Source of the DNA: Oikopleura dioica
Taxonomy: Eukaryota; Animalia; Chordata
Reading direction: 5' to 3'
DNA: 64,000 nucleotides
NCBI GenBank assembly: GCA_907165135.1
Contig: OU015567.1
Coordinates: 12,772,001 to 12,836,000 of the forward strand
In this document: positions 10,412 through 21,675 of the stretch, piece after piece
How the letters are laid out: each line of letters begins with the position of its first letter
How positions within the stretch are numbered: position 1 is the stretch's first letter
Program-made: the position numbers and the translations under genes
Notes under the pieces: generated by a model
The model's database searches: none
What the model was told of the DNA's origin: nothing
Seen by the model: the letters and a program-made list of their open reading frames with translations, nothing else

Positions 10412-10815
10412 ATGGCTTCATTCACTAACCCGAACCACGGAAATGACCTCCCGGGCTCAAGCCAGCCTTCCGGACTCGATCAGACAAAAGCACAGGTTGA
10501 TGAAGTTGTTGTTATTATGAAGCAAAATGTGGATAAAGGTACAATACAAACATCTTATGAATGCTTTTAATTTTGAATTTAGTGCTCGAGCGAGACGCAA
10601 AACTCAACGAACTTGACACTCGAGCTGATGCCCTCCAACAAGGAGCCGCCCAATTCGAAACAAACGCAAATTCTCTTCAACGAAAATTCTGGTGGCAGAA
10701 TATGAAGACGAACCTGATCATCGTCGGGGTCGTCGTTCTCATTATTGTCATTATCATCCTCGTCTCTGTCTTGCCCAACTCTGGCGGCGATAACAGCGAT
10801 GACAGTGGATCCTAG
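10412..10815 (+). CDS. Synaptobrevin/VAMP R-SNARE (VAMP2/3-like)
   Basis: MASF...[21 protein letters not shown]|[42 protein letters not shown] followed by a hydrophobic TM segment. One short GT-AG intron. An AG acceptor (TTATAG) lies just before the ATG. Confidence 0.95.
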
Positions 10816-11179
10816 ATCTTTTTAGCCTTTTCTTCAAACATTCGTGATTTATAAAATTCTGTACATACGAAAAAATTGCTGATTAATCAATTTATGAATA
10901 TTATAACTTTTTGACAGTCGCTCAATTCCAAGTCCAAAGAATAAAGAAAAAACTCCTACCTTGCAGATTCTGTTCATTTTTTCTAGTGCATCTATTATTC
11001 TATTATCGATCATTGTGAATTCAATCAAAGAAAGAAACTCTTCAAACTAGCTTCAGTTCAGCTACAGTACTTCAGTCTAATTATTCTATTATTCTAACCC
11101 CTCTTCTGTTTCTAAATTTCTTCAAAAAAATGCAAGTAGCTGATAATAACCAAACCTAGTTCAAGAGAAAGGGAGACAC

Positions 11180-13587
11180 ATGGATCAAGAGATCTTGAAA
11201 CTAATCGACGCCAGTTTTTCCAATGAAAATGAGAAGCGAATCAAGGCAGAAGAAGCACTTGCCCAGTGCGATGCAACACAAGATTTCCCCCGGGCTCTTC
11301 TTCTCATCGGATTGAATGAGGCAGTCGGCCTACAGTACCGACAATCAGCGTCAGTTCTCCTGAAGAACTGGATCGACTATCACTGGAACTCCAGCGGCGA
11401 TAAATTCAAAGAACCAGCGGCGAGCGAAGAAACGAAAGAATTCATCAGACACGGACTCCCACGAGGACTTGCTAATGAATCCAGAGCCGTGAGAAATGTC
11501 TTTGCCGCTGCCTTATCAATTGTAGCTGGCTGGGAGTGGCCCGAAATATGGCCTGATTTCGTCCCAAACTTAATCGAAGCCCTCAACTCCGACAATGCGA
11601 ATATGGTCGACGGAGCGCTTCGTTGTTTGAAAGAGTTCTCGACAGATATTAATGGAAAGTTCGCTCCAGAAATGATCAAAAACATTTTGCCCAAGTTGCT
11701 CGAATTCATGACTCCCAATTCTGGTGCTACTCCAATCATGGCTGCTCGTTCTCTCCAAATTTTGACGACGCTTACGATGCTTCTTAGCGATGCTAGAGCA
11801 AAGACATTAGGTAAGCTGAAAAACATAATATGCTCAAACAGTGATTTCTTGTAGATGATCATTACGAAAAAATCCTGACAGTTTTCCGCGCCTGTATCCT
11901 TCGTCCCGTCGATGAAGAGGACGACTGGCTCATCAAACGTAACGTCTTCAACTGCTTCAACGAGCTTGTCAAGGGCTTTTCAAAGAAGATCGCCCCAATC
12001 TCTGCTCATTGCCTTCAGGATTGCTGGTCCTTTATCGCCAAGCTTTCGAAACAATATCTTGCCATGGCGATCAACAGTGATGAAACCGAAAGCCAAGAGG
12101 ATTCAGACAACGAAACTGCTGGGATCCAAGGAACTGTCGTGGCCGCAATTGAATTTCTCTGTACAATAATTGAAAAGAAAGCGTTTGCGAAAGTCGTTCA
12201 AATTGGTGTTCCTCCGCTAATTCCATCGCTTATGATCTTTTTGCAACCATCGGCCGGGCAGATTAACGCCTGGGAAGATGATCCAGATAGATTCGTTGAA
12301 GAAGAAGACGACGAAGTCATGCTTTGCTCGGTTAGAACAACTGCCATGGATCTCCTTCTCTGTATCGCGAAAGACCACCTCGAAGTGCTTCTTCCGCCGC
12401 TTTTGGAATATGTCGGGGAGTCTCAATCTGGATCAGCAAGTTGGCAGCAGCGTGAATCCGCCTATTACATCATTGGAGCCGTTGCAAGCGCGTTGGAAGA
12501 AGAACACATGACCAAGTTTAACATTCGAGGCTATCTGGAAGGACCGACTCTTCGCGATTTGAAATCAGGTACAGTCACCGTCCGTTTATATTTCCGATTC
12601 TTTTTCCAGGTGAAAGCCCCTTCCTTACTGGCCGAGCTCTCTGGTTCTCTGCTCGTTTCGCCGACAAAGTTCCGCCTAATCTTCTGCAGGCATTCCTCGA
12701 AGCTACTGCTCACGGCCTACAAAATGGACAATCACCGATCGTCCGAATCCAAGCCGCCAGAGCCGTCTACGAGTTCATTACAAACATCCCCTTGGAAAAG
12801 AGAGAAATCCTCGGTTCCTTCGTCACTCAAGCTCTTGGTTCGTTGATTGAAATGTGCTCGTCCGCGCCGACTGAGGTTTCCTGCTTGCTTTTGGAAGTGA
12901 TCACAGAGTGCATCAACGTCGAAGAGGATAATCTTGAACAGTATGGAACGCAACTCACAGACTTGATCCTCTCGACACTGCAAAGTAACAGTTCCGATCC
13001 GCACATCTGCGCGATCGTTGAGGACATGGTCGAGGCACTTGGAAAGAAATTGACGCCACAAGTGATCGGTCAATTCCCGACTGTCTTCTCCGCCTTTGTT
13101 CCTTATTTGATCCACATCATGAAGACCCCGGAAGATGAGATCTCCAAAGATTCAGATGTCTCCAACAGCTTCATCGCCATTTGCCTCGACATCACTACCC
13201 GCTTTGTTCGATCGATTCCAAAGCCGCTTCCGGAAGAGCTTCTTCGGCAGCTTTACCCAGTCATCGTCGAAAAAACTCTTCAATCAGCGGACACTCAAGT
13301 GATTCAGTCGGGAGGCGAAGCTGTCAGAGGATTCTTTGCAGCTGCGGGGGATCAAATTTGCGCGATGGAACATGGTCTTGAAGGTGATTGATTTAAACTT
13401 AATTTATGATGGTGTGTGATCAACGATTGATTTACAATTTATTCCTCTTTATTAAACTCATATTAATAATATTTTATTACTAGCTGCTGAACGCGTCATT
13501 CTCCATCTTCTTGAACCCAACTCGCCAGAATACTCCGCCTCGTTTGCCGGCCGCCTCGTCTGTCTAATTTTGCTCAACACAAAATCC
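11180..13587 (+). CDS. IPO9: Importin-9, 5' portion (interrupted by LTR retrotransposon)
   Basis: N-terminal importin-beta fold (RQSASVLLKNWIDYHW, IAGWEWPEIWP-type motif, GALRCL), WEDDPDRFVEEEDDE...SVRTTAMDLL, WQQRESAYY, SPFLTGRALW, QSGGEAVRGF and LLEPNSPEYSASFAGRLV all match importin-9. The frame runs into the 5' LTR at 13588. Confidence 0.92.
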
Positions 13588-13843
13588 TATTGGGATCTTA
13601 GATTCGTTAGACTCCCTCGTCCCCTAAGGTCACTTGCTTATCTAGATCGAGCTTTGCTCGGTCGCCGCCGTGTATTTCTCTCCATTCGGTAATTCACGCA
13701 GTTCGTGAATTAACCTCTATTTTACTCCAGCTCGAAATACAGACGTCAAAGATACTTTACTCGTTTTCTTCACTCGTCCAGATATAGAGAGCAGGCAAAC
13801 TACGCTAGAAGTGGGAGATTCAGCAGAAGCTAGGATCCCTTCA
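13588..13843 (+). repeat. 5' LTR (256 bp, TA...CA termini)
   Basis: Begins TATTGGGATCTTAG and ends GGATCCCTTCA; same sequence at 19820-20075. Confidence 0.96.
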
Positions 13844-13844
13844 G

Positions 13845-13855
13845 TGGTATCAGAG
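13845..13855 (+). other. Primer-binding site TGGTATCAGAG
   Basis: Lies 1 nt after the 5' LTR and starts with TGG (complement of tRNA CCA). TGGTATCAGAG is the classic initiator-Met-type PBS. Confidence 0.85.
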
Positions 13856-14355
13856 TAGTCCCGTTGGAGAAAAGATAAATTTTTCCGCCATCGACAACCG
13901 AAGTTTCGCAACTTGGACGCTGATTGGCCGTCAGCGGAGTCGAGGGGAACCGAATCACCAACCGCCACCGCGCCGCCGGAGAAACTCCACTCAGAGAATT
14001 TTCCGCACCACACCAACACCACCCCGAGCGAGCGCCACCGCACGAGCGCCACCACGACCCACGCGCCGAAAGTCGCGCCCACGCAACCACGCACGCACGC
14101 CGGGGAAAACCTAAAATACTGAGAAAAACATAATTCTTTCGCCACTTTTCACCAAAAATCGAGAGAAGTTTACGAAGAATCGACCCTTGGACCAGACCTT
14201 GAAATTTCGACAATCGCTGGACAGAGAAATCGTCGGGCGTTTGCGCAAAAAGGCACCTCAGCTCATCATATTGCGACTTTTAGTCGCAGTATTTTCTGAG
14301 GGCCTGAAAGGTAATCCAAGGCCCATAAACCCTTACTGCCGATATATTTCGAGCT

Positions 14356-17300
14356 ATGGCGGCGAACAAATCACTGCTAGAAACCGTCACCGAAATAAGA
14401 AGCATAAACGATCGAGTAAACTACCTCGAAGAACAAGTGCGAAATGACGAATCACTAAAGCCAAGCCTAGAGCCCTTGATCACAGAAAGCAGAGTAAAAT
14501 TAGAACAGCTCAGTACAACGCTTCTTACCTGCGAGCTCGATCAAGGAAAAGACTCTACGAATGCGACAATGAGAGAAGAAGCATGGGTGGCCACTACCTG
14601 GTCTCGTCACGTCCAAGACTTGCCGAAGCTGGACGCCGCATGCAACACATCTTTCAACACCTTCTTGGGCAGAGCCGACATTTATCACCGCGCCTACGTC
14701 CGCGACAGACCTTCACGTGAACAGCCTTTCATCGCAGCAGTGTACAGCCACTTCGACTTGAACATCGAACGCTCACTTGGAACCGAATTTCTGAATTGTC
14801 AAGACTGGAAATCGGCCAAGGCGCTGCTAGAGAAATCATTCGCCGCGAAGAGTCACTACTTACTGAAGCTAAGCGAAGTTTTCGACGTCGAATACGACCA
14901 TTCGAAGCCGTTTGCACACTACACCGCCAACGTCTTGCAAAAGATGAACGAGGCGAAGCAAGCGACTTTGAACTCTTACCGACAAGAGAAGTCAGCCGAC
15001 GCCGGGGTCGATGAAATATTTGACATATTCTCGACGATGATGCTGTACTTGAATCTTAGGAAAGAAGAACCAGACGTTTTCAACGCAATCCTTCCAAGCC
15101 TATCAAAAGTTTACGATATCAACGAACTCTGCCGTCTCGCCCAATCCACAAGACAGAATCGAGTTGACAGCGCGACCGTCTCCCAGCACTTCAACAGAAA
15201 TAAGAACAAAAAGAAGAAGAATGCTAAGCGCGCCAGCAACGATTCTAAGGATGGGAAAGACGATAAACAACCAGAATCCAAGAAGATAAATACGACTAAG
15301 AACGTTGAAGATTTCCAACCATTCGACGTTCACTTTTACACAGTGAAGAAGAAGCGACCAGGAAAGGCTTATTTCGCTTCGGCTACCATCATTACGGGCT
15401 CTAAAAGTCTTGACGTATCGATGGAAGTCGACAGCGGAGCCGAGTCCTCCTGTCTGTCCGCTGCTTACGTTCCCGACGAATTTCTCCAGATGCTGAAGCC
15501 CTGTCCCTTCAAGGTCACCGGTTTCAGCCCAAATATTCCCGCCGAGCAGCCGATGGGTATCCTTCCCTGCCGCTTATCATTCAATGGTGGCCCTGCATTC
15601 TCCCTGAATCTCACCATTATGCCAGGCAGTAAATACCCAAGTCTACTGGGCCGCGATATACTAGAGAATGCGATGACGGACAGCTTCACAGTCGACAATA
15701 AGAATCGTACTCTCTCATTTTGCTACAACGAAGCCTTCACACAAACTGAGACTCAAGTGGTGAAGCTGGACGGAGTGAAGCGGACCAAAATCAAGAAATA
15801 CTTGACTACTAGATCAGCGGTCAAGGATAGCGATCGATCCCGCACTCAACCGCCACCAAAAGTCCCAAAGCTGGACGCACCTAACAAGAACGCAGCCAGG
15901 TGCCCCATTCAGCTAGCGAAGCAAAAACTCGGAATTACCCTACCAGCAAACGCCGACCCGGGGCAAAAGAAGGTGGTCGCCGAGCTGTGTTTGGATTTCG
16001 ACGACAGATTCGGCTGCGACGGTCAAAAAATGGGTGAATTCCCATTCGAGATCGAAATCCCGACTGATGGTACGAGTCGAAACATCAGTCAACACCCTAT
16101 TCCGCAAGCTTTTCATGGCCAGGTCACTGATCACATCTCCGAACTGCTCGATACGAAAATAATAGAAGAGATCAAGGACCAGAAAGGGTTTAATAGCCCC
16201 GTTCTGCCAATCCCTAAGAAATCTGGGGAAATGCGCTTCTGCATCAACTACAAGAACAGCTTGAACAAATGCCTCTCCGACAAATCCGACCCATATCATC
16301 TTCCGAGCATGGAGGATACGATCGCGAACATTGGACCGGGCAACAAGTATTTCGCCACAGTTGATTTGCGGAGCGGATATTGGCAGTGCCCTATTAAGAA
16401 AAGCGATAGGTATAAGACTTCCTTCCAGTGGGGTGGGAAATCTTACGCCTTCTGCAGATTACCTTTCGGTTATCGATGCTCGGGGAATATATTCTCGCGC
16501 GTCGTAAACACGATTCTCGACTCAAGCCCCACCAGGAAGAAGATGCTTTCTTATATCGATGACATAGTATGTTTTGGGAAGTCTTTCAGCTGCTATTACA
16601 ACACTCTCCGAAACCTATTCATCGCGCTCCGCAAGTTTAACGCTAAACTCAAGGGCGAAAAGTGCTCTTTCCTACAATCAGAAGCTCACTTTTTGGGCCG
16701 AATCATCAACGAAGAAGGAATCAAACCGGACCCTGCGCAAGTCTCCGCCCTTCGTCAGATGAAACCCCCACGCTCCCAAAAGGAGTTAGCTTCATTAATC
16801 GGGTCATTGAATTGGATCCGAGGTTTTCTAGAAACAAAAATGGGCGAAGCTATTTCATCCGGTTGCTTCTCGAGCAGAATGAAACCCATAAACGATGTTC
16901 GAAATTCGGCGAACGAAACAAATTGTTTCAAGTGGACCAAAGAAGCGGATTTGGCGCTCAAGGAAATTCAACGACGACTCTCCGAGACTCCTGTCATAAG
17001 CTTTCCTAACTTTGACGAGTCTTTTCACCTCTACACAGACGCGAGCCTGTACGCAGCGGGTGGTGTTCTGCTACAAGAGTATGGCGGGAGAGTGCACCTA
17101 GTAAGCGCGATTTCCCACACCTTCAACAAAGCTGAAAGAAAATGGAACACTTCAGAAAAGGAAATGTTTAGCATTGTCTGGTGCTGCGAGCGACTGGAAA
17201 AGCTCCTGAAAGGTAGATTCTTTCAGATTCACACAGACCACAGATCTTTGATCTTCCTACACAAAAAGAAGTTCAAGAATTCTAAAATAAGCCGATGGCA

Positions 17301-19509
17301 AAGCCGATTGGAAGAATTCGATTTTCACATTGTCTACATCAAGGGATCAGAAAATCAATTCGCCGATTTTATGAGCCGCAGACCTGGCGAGGACGACAAA
17401 TCACTTGGATACGACTCTGAGTTTCCCGTTGGTCGCGAGTACGAAATCGACAAGAATTCACCAGTACGTGTCTTCGTCCCTTTCTGGAACGAAAATCAGT
17501 TTCCGGAGAAAATCACTTTATCAGAGGTGAAGATACATAAGGTAAACGTCAAGGCTATCGCGGCGCCAATGGAGATTCCGTTGGTGTCAGCGAATTATAA
17601 TAACATTCTGGACTATCAAAGGGAGGACTCTGCTCTGAGTGCAATCATCACTTTTCTGGAATCTGGTAAGGAGCCACTGGACATAAAATCGCTGGTGAAG
17701 GACTCCGACCACCGACAATCGTCTCTACTCAAGATGGAAAAAGCTCTGTTCCTGGATAACACTACCGGGTGCTTGATGTGTCAATTCAAATCTGGCGCGC
17801 GGGCGGTGGTACCGGAAGCGGTAAAAAGTCACTTTCTCTTTCTAGCTCACGACTTGTCCGGTCATCTGGGCGAGCCGCGGACTTTAGAGCGATTAGAGGA
17901 CGTTTGGTGGCCTTCATTTCAAGACGATGTTTCTAACTACGTCCACAGCTGCGTCCCTTGCCTACGCAGAAAAGGATCTGCTGGAACTCGTACCAAACCG
18001 CCACTTGGAACCCTTCGTCGTGGAAAAACAGCTGGCGAATCGATTCAGATCGATTTCGCTTGTATGCCTCCCGCTGGCGGATTCAAGTATTATTTGGTGG
18101 TGGCGGACACTTTCTCTCGCTACACTTGGTGCATTCCGACGCGGTCCGACACTGCTATCCGCGCTGCAAAAGCGCTCATCTACAAGGTCTTCCTTCCCAT
18201 GGATTTCTTGCCGAAACATCTACACAGTGACAGAGGTACCCACTTCTGCGCAAGCGTGATTGACGAAATGTGTAAGCTTAACCAGATAAAACATACAATA
18301 AGTACCGCATTTCACCCTCAATCAAACGCTTTCGCAGAAAGAGCGAATCGGACTATCAAAAACAGTCTATTCTGCATGGTCAACTCATCTTCCGGTCGAA
18401 AAACTTGGGCCGACTGCGTTCCCCACGTGATGCGCGCGCTCAATAGTGTGAAAAACAAAAGCACGAAAATTTCACCGCGAGAAGTTTGGTTTGGCCGAAA
18501 AAGTACTTTCACCCACTCTACTGGCGCAGAAATGACAGCGGAAACACCTCAGGTGTTTGGTCTCAATGTTGGAGCTTTAGCGAAATCGGCGGAAGCCATT
18601 GTGAAAACTGCGATGGAAGCTGCTGACCGAGCCATGGAGCACAGGCTGAAAAACGAGCCTAAGCCGAGACCAATCCCCGCTGGCGCTGTCGTGTACATTA
18701 AGCGAGAAAACCTGACCGACGCTAAAAGCAAGAAGGAACGCTGGGTAGGTCCCCTGAAAGCCGTTTCGAGCAACGACTGGGTCGTCATGGTCGAAGATAA
18801 AAAAGGACAACGTGATTTCATCCATCGAGAACACGTGGTTCACGCCGCAGAACGAAATCACGACTTACGCTGGATTGATTACTACGAGGCCGAGTACGTA
18901 TTCCCACATTTAACCGAAATCGTTAAGTCGAAAGTCCCACAAAAATCGCCTGTTCCTACTTCCAAACCGATGGAAAAGTCCGGGTCGAAGTCGCATGGGG
19001 GGAGGAAATCTTCTCAGGTCGCGTCGACTCCGATGGTTGCTATGGAAAAACCGCCAAGATCATCTCTATCACCTATTTTGGAAAGTAGACGCCGATTGGA
19101 CATGGAAAATCTGGGAGATACAACCGCTACATCTATTTTGGACTCGTCGGTAGCTCCAGCCGAGCCGTCAGATCGCTGGTACTCTGGTGGTACTCTTTAT
19201 GAAACTGCCGAGGACATGTCAGCTGATGCTACAGTGATTTCGGAGGTTGCTGCGCCCGACAATAGCCATATGTCAGTCGATAAACAAAATTCAACAGTAG
19301 TTGAGGGCTCAGCAACTGAAAACAGCAAGAAAAGAACCCGTCCAAAGTCTTCACCAGATCGTCAATACTCAGCCGGCGCCGATCCGAATGCGACTTTAAC
19401 CGAAGTTGGAGCAGCTCATCTCCCGAAACATACAAAACGAGCACACCGTGAAACGAGGCCCGTCGAACCTCTAAACATCGGCACAAACTCGGGTCAGTCA
19501 TACGACTAA
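14356..19509 (+). CDS. Gag-Pol polyprotein (1717 aa): Gag, aspartic protease, RT, RNase H, integrase
   Basis: Protease VDSGAES...LLGRDIL; RT PVLPIPKKSGEMRFCINY, DLRSGYWQ, LPFG, YIDDI; RNase H LYTDAS, EKEMFSI, TDHRSL, ADFMSR; integrase H-X5-H...C-X2-C (HDLSGH...CVPC), IQIDF, HSDRGTHF, AERANRTIK. Uninterrupted frame. Confidence 0.97.
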   Translation: MAANKSLLETVTEIRSINDRVNYLEEQVRNDESLKPSLEPLITESRVKLEQLSTTLLTCELDQGKDSTNATMREEAWVATTWSRHVQDLPKLDAACNTSFNTFLGRADIYHRAYVRDRPSREQPFIAAVYSHFDLNIERSLGTEFLNCQDWKSAKALLEKSFAAKSHYLLKLSEVFDVEYDHSKPFAHYTANVLQKMNEAKQATLNSYRQEKSADAGVDEIFDIFSTMMLYLNLRKEEPDVFNAILPSLSKVYDINELCRLAQSTRQNRVDSATVSQHFNRNKNKKKKNAKRASNDSKDGKDDKQPESKKINTTKNVEDFQPFDVHFYTVKKKRPGKAYFASATIITGSKSLDVSMEVDSGAESSCLSAAYVPDEFLQMLKPCPFKVTGFSPNIPAEQPMGILPCRLSFNGGPAFSLNLTIMPGSKYPSLLGRDILENAMTDSFTVDNKNRTLSFCYNEAFTQTETQVVKLDGVKRTKIKKYLTTRSAVKDSDRSRTQPPPKVPKLDAPNKNAARCPIQLAKQKLGITLPANADPGQKKVVAELCLDFDDRFGCDGQKMGEFPFEIEIPTDGTSRNISQHPIPQAFHGQVTDHISELLDTKIIEEIKDQKGFNSPVLPIPKKSGEMRFCINYKNSLNKCLSDKSDPYHLPSMEDTIANIGPGNKYFATVDLRSGYWQCPIKKSDRYKTSFQWGGKSYAFCRLPFGYRCSGNIFSRVVNTILDSSPTRKKMLSYIDDIVCFGKSFSCYYNTLRNLFIALRKFNAKLKGEKCSFLQSEAHFLGRIINEEGIKPDPAQVSALRQMKPPRSQKELASLIGSLNWIRGFLETKMGEAISSGCFSSRMKPINDVRNSANETNCFKWTKEADLALKEIQRRLSETPVISFPNFDESFHLYTDASLYAAGGVLLQEYGGRVHLVSAISHTFNKAERKWNTSEKEMFSIVWCCERLEKLLKGRFFQIHTDHRSLIFLHKKKFKNSKISRWQSRLEEFDFHIVYIKGSENQFADFMSRRPGEDDKSLGYDSEFPVGREYEIDKNSPVRVFVPFWNENQFPEKITLSEVKIHKVNVKAIAAPMEIPLVSANYNNILDYQREDSALSAIITFLESGKEPLDIKSLVKDSDHRQSSLLKMEKALFLDNTTGCLMCQFKSGARAVVPEAVKSHFLFLAHDLSGHLGEPRTLERLEDVWWPSFQDDVSNYVHSCVPCLRRKGSAGTRTKPPLGTLRRGKTAGESIQIDFACMPPAGGFKYYLVVADTFSRYTWCIPTRSDTAIRAAKALIYKVFLPMDFLPKHLHSDRGTHFCASVIDEMCKLNQIKHTISTAFHPQSNAFAERANRTIKNSLFCMVNSSSGRKTWADCVPHVMRALNSVKNKSTKISPREVWFGRKSTFTHSTGAEMTAETPQVFGLNVGALAKSAEAIVKTAMEAADRAMEHRLKNEPKPRPIPAGAVVYIKRENLTDAKSKKERWVGPLKAVSSNDWVVMVEDKKGQRDFIHREHVVHAAERNHDLRWIDYYEAEYVFPHLTEIVKSKVPQKSPVPTSKPMEKSGSKSHGGRKSSQVASTPMVAMEKPPRSSLSPILESRRRLDMENLGDTTATSILDSSVAPAEPSDRWYSGGTLYETAEDMSADATVISEVAAPDNSHMSVDKQNSTVVEGSATENSKKRTRPKSSPDRQYSAGADPNATLTEVGAAHLPKHTKRAHRETRPVEPLNIGTNSGQSYD

Positions 19510-19810
19510 GCGCAAGTACTGCCCCACTCAGGTCCCCTATTCATCGACCGGGGCCTGAAAAGGTACGGAAATTATCACAGTTTACCGTCGCCGACGTATT
19601 TTGAGTTCTTCTACATGTGCAGCTACTCCTTCATGTCATCACCGCTCGGACATCACGAAAACTTCGCATCTGATTCAAGCTTTTTCCCAAAAAAGGGTTT
19701 TTTAACGCGAATCAGACTGCCTCGACGTTTCGAACCTGCCATGTTACTCATCTTACGCTTATACTCCTGCAAAAATCACACACTTTGGCCTTAGAGGACG
19801 TTTCAGTCTC

Positions 19811-19819
19811 ATGGGGGGG
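19811..19819 (+). other. Polypurine tract
   Basis: ATGGGGGGG directly abutting the 3' LTR. Confidence 0.75.
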
Positions 19820-20075
19820 TATTGGGATCTTAGATTCGTTAGACTCCCTCGTCCCCTAAGGTCACTTGCTTATCTAGATCGAGCTTTGCTCGGTCGCCGC
19901 CGTGTATTTCTCTCCATTCGGTAATTCACGCAGTTCGTGAATTAACCTCTATTTTACTCCAGCTCGAAATACAGACGTCAAAGATACTTTACTCGTTTTC
20001 TTCACTCGTCCAGATATAGAGAGCAGGCAAACTACGCTAGAAGTGGGAGATTCAGCAGAAGCTAGGATCCCTTCA
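19820..20075 (+). repeat. 3' LTR (256 bp)
   Basis: Direct repeat of 13588-13843, followed by the TSD ATCC. Confidence 0.96.
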
Positions 20076-21000
20076 ATCCCAAAACCTAGAAAACATTCTC
20101 TCTGCTGTCCTGCTGAAGCTCAACACTGCCACTACTCTCACTGTTCAACAGGCTCTTCTTCTCGTCTTTGCGCGATTGGCTTCGGCGGATACTATGGGAC
20201 TGGTCAACTTTTTGGATTCGAAAAATGCTCTTCAGGTAGAGTTCTGCCCAGAAAGGGGGTGCTATCTAAAATTTAGCCATTGATGCAACTGTGGCTTGAA
20301 AAACAATGCGAAGTTTTTGGCGCTTATGAACGAAAGGTTACAGTAGCTGGTCTTTGCAGCCTCCTTACTCTATGTGCTAATGGCGAGGAACGCTTGATCA
20401 ACTTATCCTTGCGAAAGAAAATTGAAGGTAAGGGTACGTCTGCTATACTTTCTTAATAATAAACGAAGATCATTCTGGAGGTCGATCGACAAGATCAAAA
20501 AAGAAAGTTGAAAAATTCGCTGATGTTCCGTTTTCTCAAATCGCGCTGGAAACGTTAGCTTCTGAGTGGACTAGCCAAAGAGAAAAGGAAGAAGATCTTG
20601 AAGGTAATTGAAAATGATCGAAACATCGGAAAGATATTTATATTAGAAATTTTGGATGACGACGAAGATGATTACGAAGAAGACTCCTCCGGCGAAGTTG
20701 AATCTGACGAGATTAATTTTGGAACGAACGGTCAAACGGCAATTTTGTTGAGCGAGTTACTCGCCGGCCGAGGAGATCTGGAAGACTTGGAGGGAGAAGA
20801 AGAGGACGATGTGAAAAGCGACCCTCTTCATGGAATCAAGATTTGCGAACACATCACTGAACAGATTCGCAATCTCGCTAATTCCTCCCTTATCAGGGTA
20901 TGTTACCTCTGTCGGTATTTGTTTAACGATTGTTTAGGAAACTGCAAGTCACCTGGACGAAACCAACCGAAAGATTCTCGAGCGAGTCATCACTGCGTAA
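20076..21000 (+). CDS. IPO9: Importin-9, 3' portion
   Basis: Removing the element and one TSD restores ...LILLNTK-SQNLENILSAVLLKLNTATTLTVQQALLLVFARL..., then FGAYERKVTVAGLCSLL, GRSTRSK, an acidic DDEDDYEED tract, KSDPLHGI and SHLDETNRKILERVITA* (TAA 20998-21000). This is the importin-9 C-terminus. Confidence 0.9.
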
Positions 21001-21675
21001 ACTTCTCCTGACTGATATTGAAGCTGGAAGCTGCCAATATCTCACCTCACAACATCTGTCACTGTATGAGCATGTGACAGTCACTCCATGCACATTTAGA
21101 ATGAATTAAACATGTTCAATTGTATAACTGCTGCTATACTAATAAACTAACCACTGGAATACAAAAATTATAAAACAATGAGAAATGTTTTATGAGAAAA
21201 AGATGTTTTCTTCTTTGTTTTCAACGTTCCATTTTTCTCGTGGCTTGACTTGATTTTCTGTGTCTTCTGTCTTCATCAGTATAATTGTTGCTGCAATCGA
21301 TGACGTCTTTTGTTTAAAGAAATCGAAGTTTATCATTTTTCTCCGCTTAAAAATTTCAAATGAAAATTTATTAGGGCTTTAGTTTTCGGGGCAATCATCA
21401 AAAATCATCGGTACCTAAATACCTTTTCGTATGGCGCCAGAGCCGGCCGAAACCGAAATTGAAATCGGATTTTCAACAAAAAATCCGCCTCGTTAGACGA
21501 ATCTCGTGGGCTTAACTTTAGAACTAGAAATATCCGGATCTATTACTTGTTACGTTTTTTTACCTGTAAGGCGCGTCGGAAAAATTATTAAGTCTAGTTG
21601 AAATTATCGTCTCAACGCAATTTTATGAGCAAGTCAAAGCCAGATCATCAAAATACTTAAATGTGATCTACCAGA

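What the first reader, a model, noticed from the sequence alone, without database searches (positions are those of the whole stretch)
13584..20079. Intact, very young LTR retrotransposon inserted inside a coding exon of importin-9
Seen: LTRs identical by eye, intact 1717-aa ORF and TSD ATCC. Deleting the element plus one TSD rejoins the IPO9 frame (LLNTK-SQNLENIL). As assembled, IPO9 reads into the LTR for 34 foreign codons and stops at TAA 13690-13692, losing its C-terminal HEAT repeats and acidic loop. Known: importin-9 imports H2A-H2B and actin and is normally conserved. Inference: this is a recent, probably heterozygous or haplotype-specific disruptive insertion from an active element.
Basis: partly seen in the sequence, partly recalled or inferred. 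Interest (0 to 1): 0.8.

Follow-up and report, generated by a model that had tools for sequence, protein, structure and literature searches.

The report
Young retrotransposon splitting the importin-9 gene
A freshly jumped 6.5-kb virus-like mobile element sits in a coding exon of the single importin-9 gene in this Oikopleura dioica reference, but unbroken copies of the gene exist in DNA and RNA of the same species, so it is a real but ordinary low-frequency insertion of a known kind.

Summary
There are two 256-nt LTRs with no differences, a 4-bp target-site duplication ATCC, an open 1717-aa gag-pol frame in Ty3/gypsy order, and an importin-9 (IPO9) exon that rejoins in frame when the element and one ATCC are removed. 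As assembled, IPO9 reads 34 foreign codons and stops at 13690-13692.

The genome's size statistics match the Okinawan Oikopleura dioica assembly OKI2018_I69. That assembly comes from one male with 3.6% heterozygosity, merged to one haplotype. The window lies on an autosome. IPO9 is single copy and its downstream exons are intact.

Contigs from public runs show the empty site exactly as predicted: one RNA run and two DNA runs from two studies. The insertion is therefore polymorphic, and an unbroken allele is expressed. No listed contig bridged the filled junction, so zygosity in the sequenced animal remains inferred.

The family is in a burst:
- At least 44 copies are present.
- All 22 copies examined have identical LTRs and 4-bp duplications.
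- The copies do not avoid coding-like DNA.

Hemizygous, rare insertions of this kind (Tor elements) were described for O. dioica in 2015, and this scan noted the same family in exons of other genes. This is a new member of a known kind, of modest interest. The main practical point is that the reference IPO9 gene model is broken.

The parts
13584..13587 (+). Left copy of the 4-bp target-site duplication ATCC. These are also the last bases of the left half of the IPO9 exon.
13588..13843 (+). 5' LTR, 256 nt, starting TATTGGGATC and ending GGATCCCTTCA, with imperfect terminal inverted repeats.
   Evidence: 100% identical to the 3' LTR, with no extension of the match beyond either end
13690..13692 (+). 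TAA that ends the IPO9 frame after 34 LTR-encoded codons, as assembled.
13845..13863 (+). Primer-binding-site-like stretch TGGTATCAGAGTAGTCCCG, one base after the 5' LTR. The matching tRNA was not identified.
   Evidence: Its complement occurs 39 times exactly in the genome. Most of those places coincide with element copies listed, and the two other places checked were also element copies with no tRNA gene.
14356..19509 (+). Single gag-pol ORF of 1717 aa plus stop. No separate env ORF follows it.
15427..15669 (+). Aspartic protease region. A DSG motif is visible in the translation.
   Evidence: RVP, E 0.007, below Pfam's cut-off
16210..16701 (+). Reverse transcriptase domain. The motif YIDD is present.
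   Evidence: RVT_1, E 1e-22
16933..17319 (+). RNase H domain.
   Evidence: RT_RNaseH, E 8e-29
17809..18318 (+). Integrase: zinc-binding H2C2 domain and catalytic core.
   Evidence: Integrase_H2C2, E 4e-13; rve, E 9e-14
18319..19506 (+). C-terminal tail of the polyprotein, about 400 aa, rich in Ser, Pro and Lys. It matches no family and shows no obvious membrane segment.
   Evidence: no Pfam match at E up to 1
19813..19819 (+). G run (GGGGGGG) directly before the 3' LTR, in the position of a polypurine tract.
19820..20075 (+). 3' LTR, 256 nt.
20076..20079 (+). Right copy of the target-site duplication ATCC.
11158..11807 (+). IPO9 exon 1. The ATG is at 11180. It contains an importin-beta N-terminal domain. 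An RNA contig carries 20 foreign letters before 11158, which look like the species' spliced leader.
   Evidence: loose end and joint; (IBN_N, E 7e-12)
11852..12565 (+). IPO9 exon 2. Boundaries are within about 3 nt.
   Evidence: GT..AG joints in RNA run X1; human IPO9 residues 313-488, E 2e-16
12607..13381 (+). IPO9 exon 3.
   Evidence: joints; (human IPO9 residues 491-729, E 3e-29)
13482..13587 (+). Left half of the interrupted IPO9 exon.
   Evidence: joint 13381 to 13482; human IPO9 residues 745-771, weak, E 0.18, but collinear
20080..20235 (+). Right half of the interrupted IPO9 exon.
   Evidence: human IPO9 residues 780-826, E 3e-4; loose ends at 13587 read exactly these letters
20277..20999 (+). 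Four further IPO9 exons, at about 20277-20428, 20469-20602, 20646-20898 (acidic loop) and 20939-20999. All are open, with GT..AG introns of about 40 nt. The stop is TAA at 20997-20999.

Best explanation
An autonomous-looking, env-less Ty3/gypsy LTR retrotransposon integrated very recently, in sense orientation, into a coding exon of the single-copy importin-9 gene. It is most likely one of the Tor elements of Oikopleura dioica. The site corresponds to about residue 779 of the 1041-residue human protein.

Integration made the usual 4-bp target-site duplication. The allele carrying the element is one of several at this locus. Unbroken alleles occur in DNA and are the ones seen in mRNA.

The reference is a haploid merge of one highly heterozygous male, and at this locus it shows the filled allele. 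Inferred: the sequenced animal was heterozygous. Inferred: the filled allele is a recessive loss-of-function allele, because its product would end 34 codons into the LTR. That product would lack the last quarter of the protein, including the C-terminal HEAT repeats that form one jaw of the H2A-H2B clamp. Inferred: such insertions are removed by selection before they age.
For: Anatomy.

IPO9 identity and collinear exons.

Intact downstream exons.

Single copy: searches find only the gene itself. Elsewhere there are only a 255-bp fragment and 198-nt fragments.

Empty allele:
- RNA run X1 has a contig that is spliced 13381^13482, runs to 13587, and then carries 249 further letters. These begin with 30 of 30 letters of 20080-20109.
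- DNA runs X3 (study P1) and X6 (study P3) do the same, with one SNP.

Activity of the family:
- The genome holds 21 or more full-length copies at 98-100% identity and 44 PBS-bearing copies.
- All 22 copies examined have identical LTR pairs and 4-bp duplications of varied sequence.
- This copy differs by 2-4 substitutions from six others.
- An element RNA contig is present in X1.

Assembly context:
- The genome has 64,281,565 bases in 19 contigs, with contig sizes 17.09, 16.16, 14.53, 12.96 and 2.92 Mb. These match OKI2018_I69.
- That assembly is from one male with 3.6% heterozygosity, reduced to a HaploMerger2 reference sub-assembly. Its two largest scaffolds are autosomes (PMC8008620).

Precedent: Tor insertions are hemizygous, present in under 5% of animals, and none was found homozygous (PMC4402516).

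What is lost: interface 3 of Importin-9 with H2A-H2B lies in the last three HEAT repeats (PMC6453568).
Against: - No contig listed bridges 13587/13588, so the filled junction has no support independent of the assembly. 647 pieces were not shown, and contigs break at repeats.
- I cannot say which run, if any, is the sequenced animal, so heterozygosity in that animal is inferred.
- Placement among the named Tor groups was not tested. The nearest database protein is only 63% identical and carries no name.
- The tRNA primer was not found.
- No chimeric IPO9-LTR transcript was seen.
Confidence: 0.85

Rival explanations
1. The sequenced male was homozygous for the insertion. In that case the animal lived with only a truncated importin-9, and the empty alleles seen come from other animals.
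For: The assembly shows only the filled form. No run could be tied to the sequenced animal. From memory, not checked here: importin-9 loss is compatible with viability, though not fertility, in Drosophila.
Against: - Empty alleles occur in runs of the same study and culture period (X1, X3).
- The locus is autosomal in an animal with 3.6% heterozygosity.
- No homozygous Tor insertion was found in the published survey.
- The insertion has no LTR differences, so it has had little time to rise in frequency.
Confidence: 0.08
2. Assembly artefact: a repeat copy was wrongly placed between two halves of the exon by chimeric long reads or by haplotype merging.
For: No listed read-derived contig bridges the junction. 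The assembly is Nanopore-based, with a stated error rate of 1.3%.
Against: - A complete element is bounded by a perfect 4-bp duplication of the target, and its removal restores the exon frame exactly. Misjoins do not duplicate four target bases.
- All 22 sister copies show the same 4-bp signature.
- The X4 contig stops within one base of the insertion point, and an X3 contig breaks 61 bases before it. This is what a branch between two alleles would give. It is indirect evidence only.
Confidence: 0.03
3. The interrupted gene was already a dead copy, and a working IPO9 lies elsewhere.
For: Small IPO9-like fragments exist elsewhere. One is 255 bp at C5:5732069-5732323. Another is a 198-nt acidic-loop fragment inside a repeat with three copies.
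Against: - All nine exons are open, with good splice sites and a conserved C-terminus.
- The gene is transcribed, spliced and apparently trans-spliced.
- Three large exons used as protein queries find only themselves in the whole assembly.
Confidence: 0.02
4. The element is removed from the pre-mRNA, as a new intron, so the filled allele still yields normal IPO9. The 'empty' RNA contig would then come from the filled allele.
For: The RNA contig in X1 matches the window haplotype over the 30 letters after the site and nearly so before it. From memory: O. dioica uses many non-canonical introns.
Against: - The skipped stretch 13588-20079 begins TA and ends CC, which is not a splice signal.
- The same junction exists in DNA contigs of X3 and X6, so no RNA processing is needed to explain it.
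Confidence: 0.02

Closest known systems
Tor elements (Ty3/gypsy Oikopleura retrotransposons; Volff et al. 2004, from memory; Henriet et al. 2015, PMC4402516)
   Same: - Same host species, by assembly match.
- Ty3/gypsy domain order.
- 4-bp target-site duplication (4 or 5 in the paper).
- Near-identical LTRs and intact ORFs.
- Insertions absent from other haplotypes.
- The family is transcribed.
- The assembly paper states that TORs make up 2.97 Mb of this genome.
   Different: - There is no env gene. The paper notes that a few Tor elements lack env.
- Gag and pol form one 1717-aa frame with a long unassigned C-terminal tail.
- Placement in Tor1-Tor4 was not tested.
- The nearest protein in the large database is only 63% identical over RT-integrase. 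This Okinawan family is therefore probably not one of the Bergen elements described.
Ty3 of yeast and Tf2-type Metaviridae elements
   Same: RT, RNase H, H2C2 zinc finger and DDE integrase occur in the same order. Tf2-type polyproteins are among the hits.
   Different: No chromodomain and no CCHC gag knuckle were detected. No sign of targeted integration was seen: the duplicated 4-mers vary, and coding-like DNA is hit as often as at random.
Importin-9 / Kap114 (human IPO9, PDB 6N1Z)
   Same: The N-terminal importin-beta domain is present. The exons are collinear with human residues about 1-1041. An acidic loop lies near the C-terminus.
   Different: Here the reference allele is cut at the equivalent of residue 779 or so. 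Sequence identity to human is low, as is usual for this fast-evolving species.

Membership tests
LTR retrotransposon, Ty3/gypsy (Metaviridae) | Two direct long terminal repeats flanked by a short target-site duplication | tested here: met
   The LTRs are 256 nt and 100% identical, with duplication ATCC. The same holds in 22 of 22 sister copies.
LTR retrotransposon, Ty3/gypsy (Metaviridae) | Pol order protease, reverse transcriptase, RNase H, integrase | tested here: met
   RVT_1 at residues 619-782, RT_RNaseH at 885-988, H2C2 at 1152-1207 and rve at 1227-1321. The protease match at 358-438 is weak (E 0.007), but a DSG motif is present.
LTR retrotransposon, Ty3/gypsy (Metaviridae) | Primer binding site complementary to a host tRNA next to the 5' LTR, and a polypurine tract before the 3' LTR | tested here: inconclusive
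   A TGG-initiated stretch lies one base after the LTR and a G7 run lies before the 3' LTR. The two non-element-listed complement hits checked were further element copies, and no tRNA gene was found there.
Tor elements of Oikopleura dioica | Pol groups with Tor1-Tor4 in a phylogeny | not tested
   No named Tor reference sequences were at hand. The closest database protein (P0001, 63% identical) is an unnamed metagenome contig.
Tor elements of Oikopleura dioica | Host is O. dioica; insertions are young and polymorphic or hemizygous | tested here: met
   The assembly statistics match OKI2018_I69. The empty site is found in three runs labelled as the same organism.
Tor elements of Oikopleura dioica | env gene after pol (present in many, not all, Tor elements) | tested here: not met
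   Only 310 nt lie between the pol stop and the 3' LTR, with no ORF there. This feature is not obligatory for the family.
Importin-9 (IPO9/Kap114) | Importin-beta N-terminal (Ran-binding) domain | tested here: met
   IBN_N, E 7e-12, 45.7 bits against a cut-off of 21.
Importin-9 (IPO9/Kap114) | Closest to Importin-9 rather than to other karyopherins, along the whole length | tested here: met
   For four exons, Importin-9 is the best match among solved structures, and the only one for three of them (the 52-aa piece also gave weaker matches to designed repeat proteins), in collinear order. HEAT_IPO9_c reaches only 21.4 bits, below its cut-off of 27.
Importin-9 (IPO9/Kap114) | Imports H2A-H2B | not testable with these tools
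   Function is inferred from homology only.

The most novel reading that the evidence does not exclude
The sequenced male, or part of the culture, carries the insertion on both chromosomes. O. dioica would then tolerate an importin-9 that lacks its C-terminal histone-clamping repeats. That would point to a redundant H2A-H2B import route in this stripped-down chordate genome.
Probability: 0.06. Interest if true: 0.65.

Novelty: new member of a known kind. Interest (0 to 1): 0.3.

Why it matters
- **Annotation.** The reference gene model for importin-9 in this assembly is broken by an allele that is not the common one. The same family breaks other open frames, so gene sets, orthology tables and BUSCO-type scores built on this reference will miss or truncate real genes.
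- **Biology.** All 22 copies examined have identical LTRs, and the copies do not avoid coding-like DNA. This fits the published picture of constant transposition balanced by fast removal in a very compact genome. It also offers a tractable family for measuring transposition rate and selection against insertions in culture.
- **Limits.** None of this is new in kind.

Tried and rejected
- **Sister protein look-up.** I looked for the exact 1717-aa product in public assemblies, hoping to see this or other insertion sites in other animals. Nothing is on record.
- **tRNA primer.** I searched for the tRNA primer through the complement of the PBS. The places checked, and those overlapping copies already listed, were element copies, and ARAGORN found no tRNA at the two non-listed loci tried.
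- **Target motif.** Contigs in X3 and X4 start matching at 13584, which suggested a shared ATCC target motif. Two other copies simply have flanks ending ACGATC(A/G), and the duplicated 4-mers of 22 copies vary. Rejected.
- **Preference for coding exons.** I tested whether the family prefers them. 14 of 22 copies have a junction-spanning open frame of at least 100 codons. The same is true of 50% of 3000 random positions in this window. There is no preference and no avoidance.
- **Telomere pattern search.** A search meant to size the contigs gave an unusable list. Contig lengths came instead.
- **Fetching 20 more copies.** Those copies on C1-C4, including the X-specific scaffold, were left out. 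The comparison of X-linked with autosomal copies was therefore not made.
- **HaploMerger2 rule.** The paper does not state a 'longer allele' rule, so I do not claim one.
- **Joined sequences.** The rejoined exon and the spliced coding sequence were examined only in local scripts.
- **Consensus.** No consensus of the element copies was built.
Full report
**1. The observation**

A repeat search finds a single pair of long direct repeats in 12500-21500. They lie at 13588-13843 and 19820-20075, are 256 nt each and are 100% identical. A script confirms identity and shows that the match cannot be extended by one base on either side. The four bases before the first repeat and after the second are both ATCC.

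Between the repeats lies one ORF, 14356-19509, of 1717 aa. Pfam places reverse transcriptase, RNase H, an H2C2 zinc finger and the integrase core along it in that order, all far above threshold. A weak retroviral protease match lies upstream. The translation shows DSG, YIDD, the H..H/C..C finger and plausible D, D, E integrase residues.

A TGG-initiated stretch lies one base after the 5' LTR, and a run of seven G lies directly before the 3' LTR. No ORF fits in the 310 nt between the pol stop and the 3' LTR, so there is no env gene. The first 350 and the last 400 residues match no family.

**2. The host gene**

Removing 13588-20079 joins ...LLNTKS to QNLENIL... in one open frame. As assembled, the frame runs 34 codons into the LTR and stops at TAA 13690-13692.

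Searched exon by exon against solved structures, each exon finds human Importin-9 as its best match (for three of the four, its only match). The order is collinear:
- 12064-12843 matches residues 313-488 (E 2e-16).
- 12609-13379 matches residues 491-729 (E 3e-29).
- 13483-13587 matches residues 745-771 (weak).
- 20080-20235 matches residues 780-826 (E 3e-4).

The first exon carries the importin-beta N-terminal domain. Downstream of the element, four more exons are open, with 40-nt GT..AG introns. They include the acidic loop and a conserved C-terminus, and end at TAA 20997-20999. The gene is therefore about 1000 codons long and is cut after about codon 747. Its 3' part shows no decay.

In human Importin-9 the last three HEAT repeats form interface 3 of the clamp around H2A-H2B. 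Deleting one loop there lowers affinity 15-fold (PMC6453568). All of that would be missing from the truncated product.

**3. The genome**

The window is C5:12772001-12836000 of a 64,281,565-base assembly in 19 contigs. The five large contigs are 17.09, 16.16, 14.53, 12.96 and 2.92 Mb.

The figures match the published OKI2018_I69 assembly: 64.3 Mb, 19 scaffolds, longest 17.1 Mb, N50 16.2 Mb (PMC8008620). That assembly comes from one male with about 3.6% heterozygosity. A 99-Mb diploid draft was reduced by HaploMerger2 to a reference and an allelic sub-assembly. The two largest scaffolds are the autosomes. C5 is the second largest, so the locus is diploid in the sequenced male, and the reference shows only one of his two alleles.

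**4. IPO9 copy number**

Three large exons used as protein queries find only themselves in the whole assembly. DNA flanks find two kinds of fragment:
- A 255-bp piece at C5:5732069-5732323, made of part of the interrupted exon, the intron and the start of the next exon (73% identity with a 44-nt gap).
- A 198-nt piece of the acidic-loop exon at 91% identity, sitting in three copies of a non-coding repeat of at least 2.9 kb.

Neither is a paralogue.

**5. Reads**

One search for runs gave four runs of one 2020 study (X1-X4), one of a 2022 study (X6) and others. Only contigs, not raw reads, are kept for these. I laid X1, X3, X4 and X6 on 10600-14600.

X1 is in fact RNA. Its contigs skip 11808-11851, 12566-12606 and 13382-13481 at GT..AG. 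One contig carries 20 foreign letters before 11158 that, from memory, are the end of the species' spliced leader.

One X1 contig of 463 letters covers 13274-13381 and 13482-13587. It then continues for 249 letters that do not lie on the LTR. Its first 30 such letters equal 20080-20109 exactly. X3 and X6, both DNA and from two studies, each have a contig that does the same, with one T-to-C difference.

The predicted empty site therefore exists in DNA and is the form seen in mRNA. The skipped stretch starts TA and ends CC, and the same junction is present in DNA, so this is an allele and not a splice.

No listed contig bridges 13587/13588, but 647 pieces were not shown and de Bruijn contigs stop at repeats. 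The X4 contig stops at 13586, and an X3 contig breaks at 13526. This is what a branch between two alleles would give, but it is indirect.

X1 also holds a 2022-letter contig identical to the element's interior over the 524 letters laid. The family is therefore transcribed.

**6. The family**

The whole element finds 21 or more full-length copies at 98-100% identity. The complement of the PBS occurs 39 times exactly and 5 times with one mismatch. Extra hits that I checked are further copies.

I examined 22 full-length copies. All 22 have no differences between their own LTRs and a perfect 4-bp duplication whose sequence varies. Twelve keep the 1717-aa frame. The others differ by small indels that may be Nanopore homopolymer errors.

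The IPO9 copy differs from six others by 2-4 substitutions in 6.5 kb. A second subfamily is about 0.8% away. Against 3.6% heterozygosity, these events are extremely recent.

I asked whether hitting an exon is unusual. The longest open frame spanning the reconstructed empty site is at least 100 codons for 14 of 22 copies. The same holds for 50% of 3000 random positions in this gene-dense window. Integration is thus neither drawn to nor kept out of coding-like DNA.

First readers of this scan noted what are, by coordinates, the same family in exons of a USP9X-like gene and of midasin. My loci L038 and L037 are those copies. They have spanning open frames of 512 and 127 codons.

**7. What is known**

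Henriet et al. 2015 (PMC4402516) described Tor elements of O. dioica with these properties:
- near-identical LTRs;
- 4- or 5-bp duplications;
- intact ORFs;
- insertions present in one haplotype only and in under 5% of animals;
- no homozygous insertion found;
- turnover under strong purifying selection.

The assembly paper reports 2.97 Mb of TORs. The present case is one more such insertion. The nearest protein in the large database is 63% identical over RT-integrase and lies on an unnamed 6.6-kb metagenome contig. This Okinawan family is therefore probably not one of the named Bergen elements. I could not place it in Tor1-Tor4.

**8. Verdict**

The mechanism is ordinary retrotransposition into a gene, giving a recessive, probably heterozygous, loss-of-function allele that the haploid reference happens to display.

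- Shown: the anatomy, the host gene, single copy, the empty allele in DNA and RNA, and the youth and activity of the family.
- Inferred: heterozygosity in the sequenced male, loss of function, and removal by selection.
- Interest is modest (0.3).

The practical lesson is that this reference contains gene models broken by rare insertion alleles.

Noticed in passing
L013:1461-1658, L014:1501-1698, L015:1461-1658 (G000 C16:43420, C4:5133572, C1:6017197); window 20642-20839: A 198-nt piece of the IPO9 acidic-loop exon, 91% identical, sits inside a repeat of at least 2.9 kb. The repeat has three copies that are 97-99.6% alike and has no long ORF. It looks like a gene fragment captured by a non-autonomous repeat.
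   Followed up: partly
L016:1501-1755 (G000 C5:5732069-5732323, minus strand): A 255-bp IPO9 fragment covers part of the interrupted exon, the intron (with 44 extra bases) and the start of the next exon. It is a small DNA-level duplication, not a paralogue.
   Followed up: partly
window 13044 (IPO9 exon 3): All four runs have contig breaks at 13044-13077. An RNA contig of X1 joins 13044 to 255 letters whose last 30 are absent from the whole assembly even with two mismatches. This may be another insertion allele or a chimeric contig.
   Followed up: partly
window 11158: An RNA contig carries 20 foreign letters (TCCGATTTCGATTGTCTAAC) directly before 11158. From memory this is the 3' part of the O. 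dioica spliced leader. If so, IPO9 mRNA is trans-spliced 22 nt before its ATG.
   Followed up: no
G000 C1:6267476 and C5:9248923 (L032, L033, L039, L045): Two copies of the family have the same six bases, ACGATC, before the LTR. Contigs in X3 and X4 show similar flanks.
   Followed up: partly
L039 (G000 C5:9240900-9250500): Two LTRs lie only 4.8 kb apart. This may be an internally deleted copy of the family.
   Followed up: no
window 18319-19506: The polyprotein ends in a tail of about 400 aa, rich in Ser, Pro and Lys, that follows the integrase and matches no family. Its role, for instance in tethering or targeting, is unknown.
   Followed up: partly
L046, L047 (G000 C2:1296931, C5:12124369): One-mismatch matches to the PBS complement have no LTR of this family nearby. 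They may be a related family, a tRNA-like sequence, or chance.
   Followed up: no
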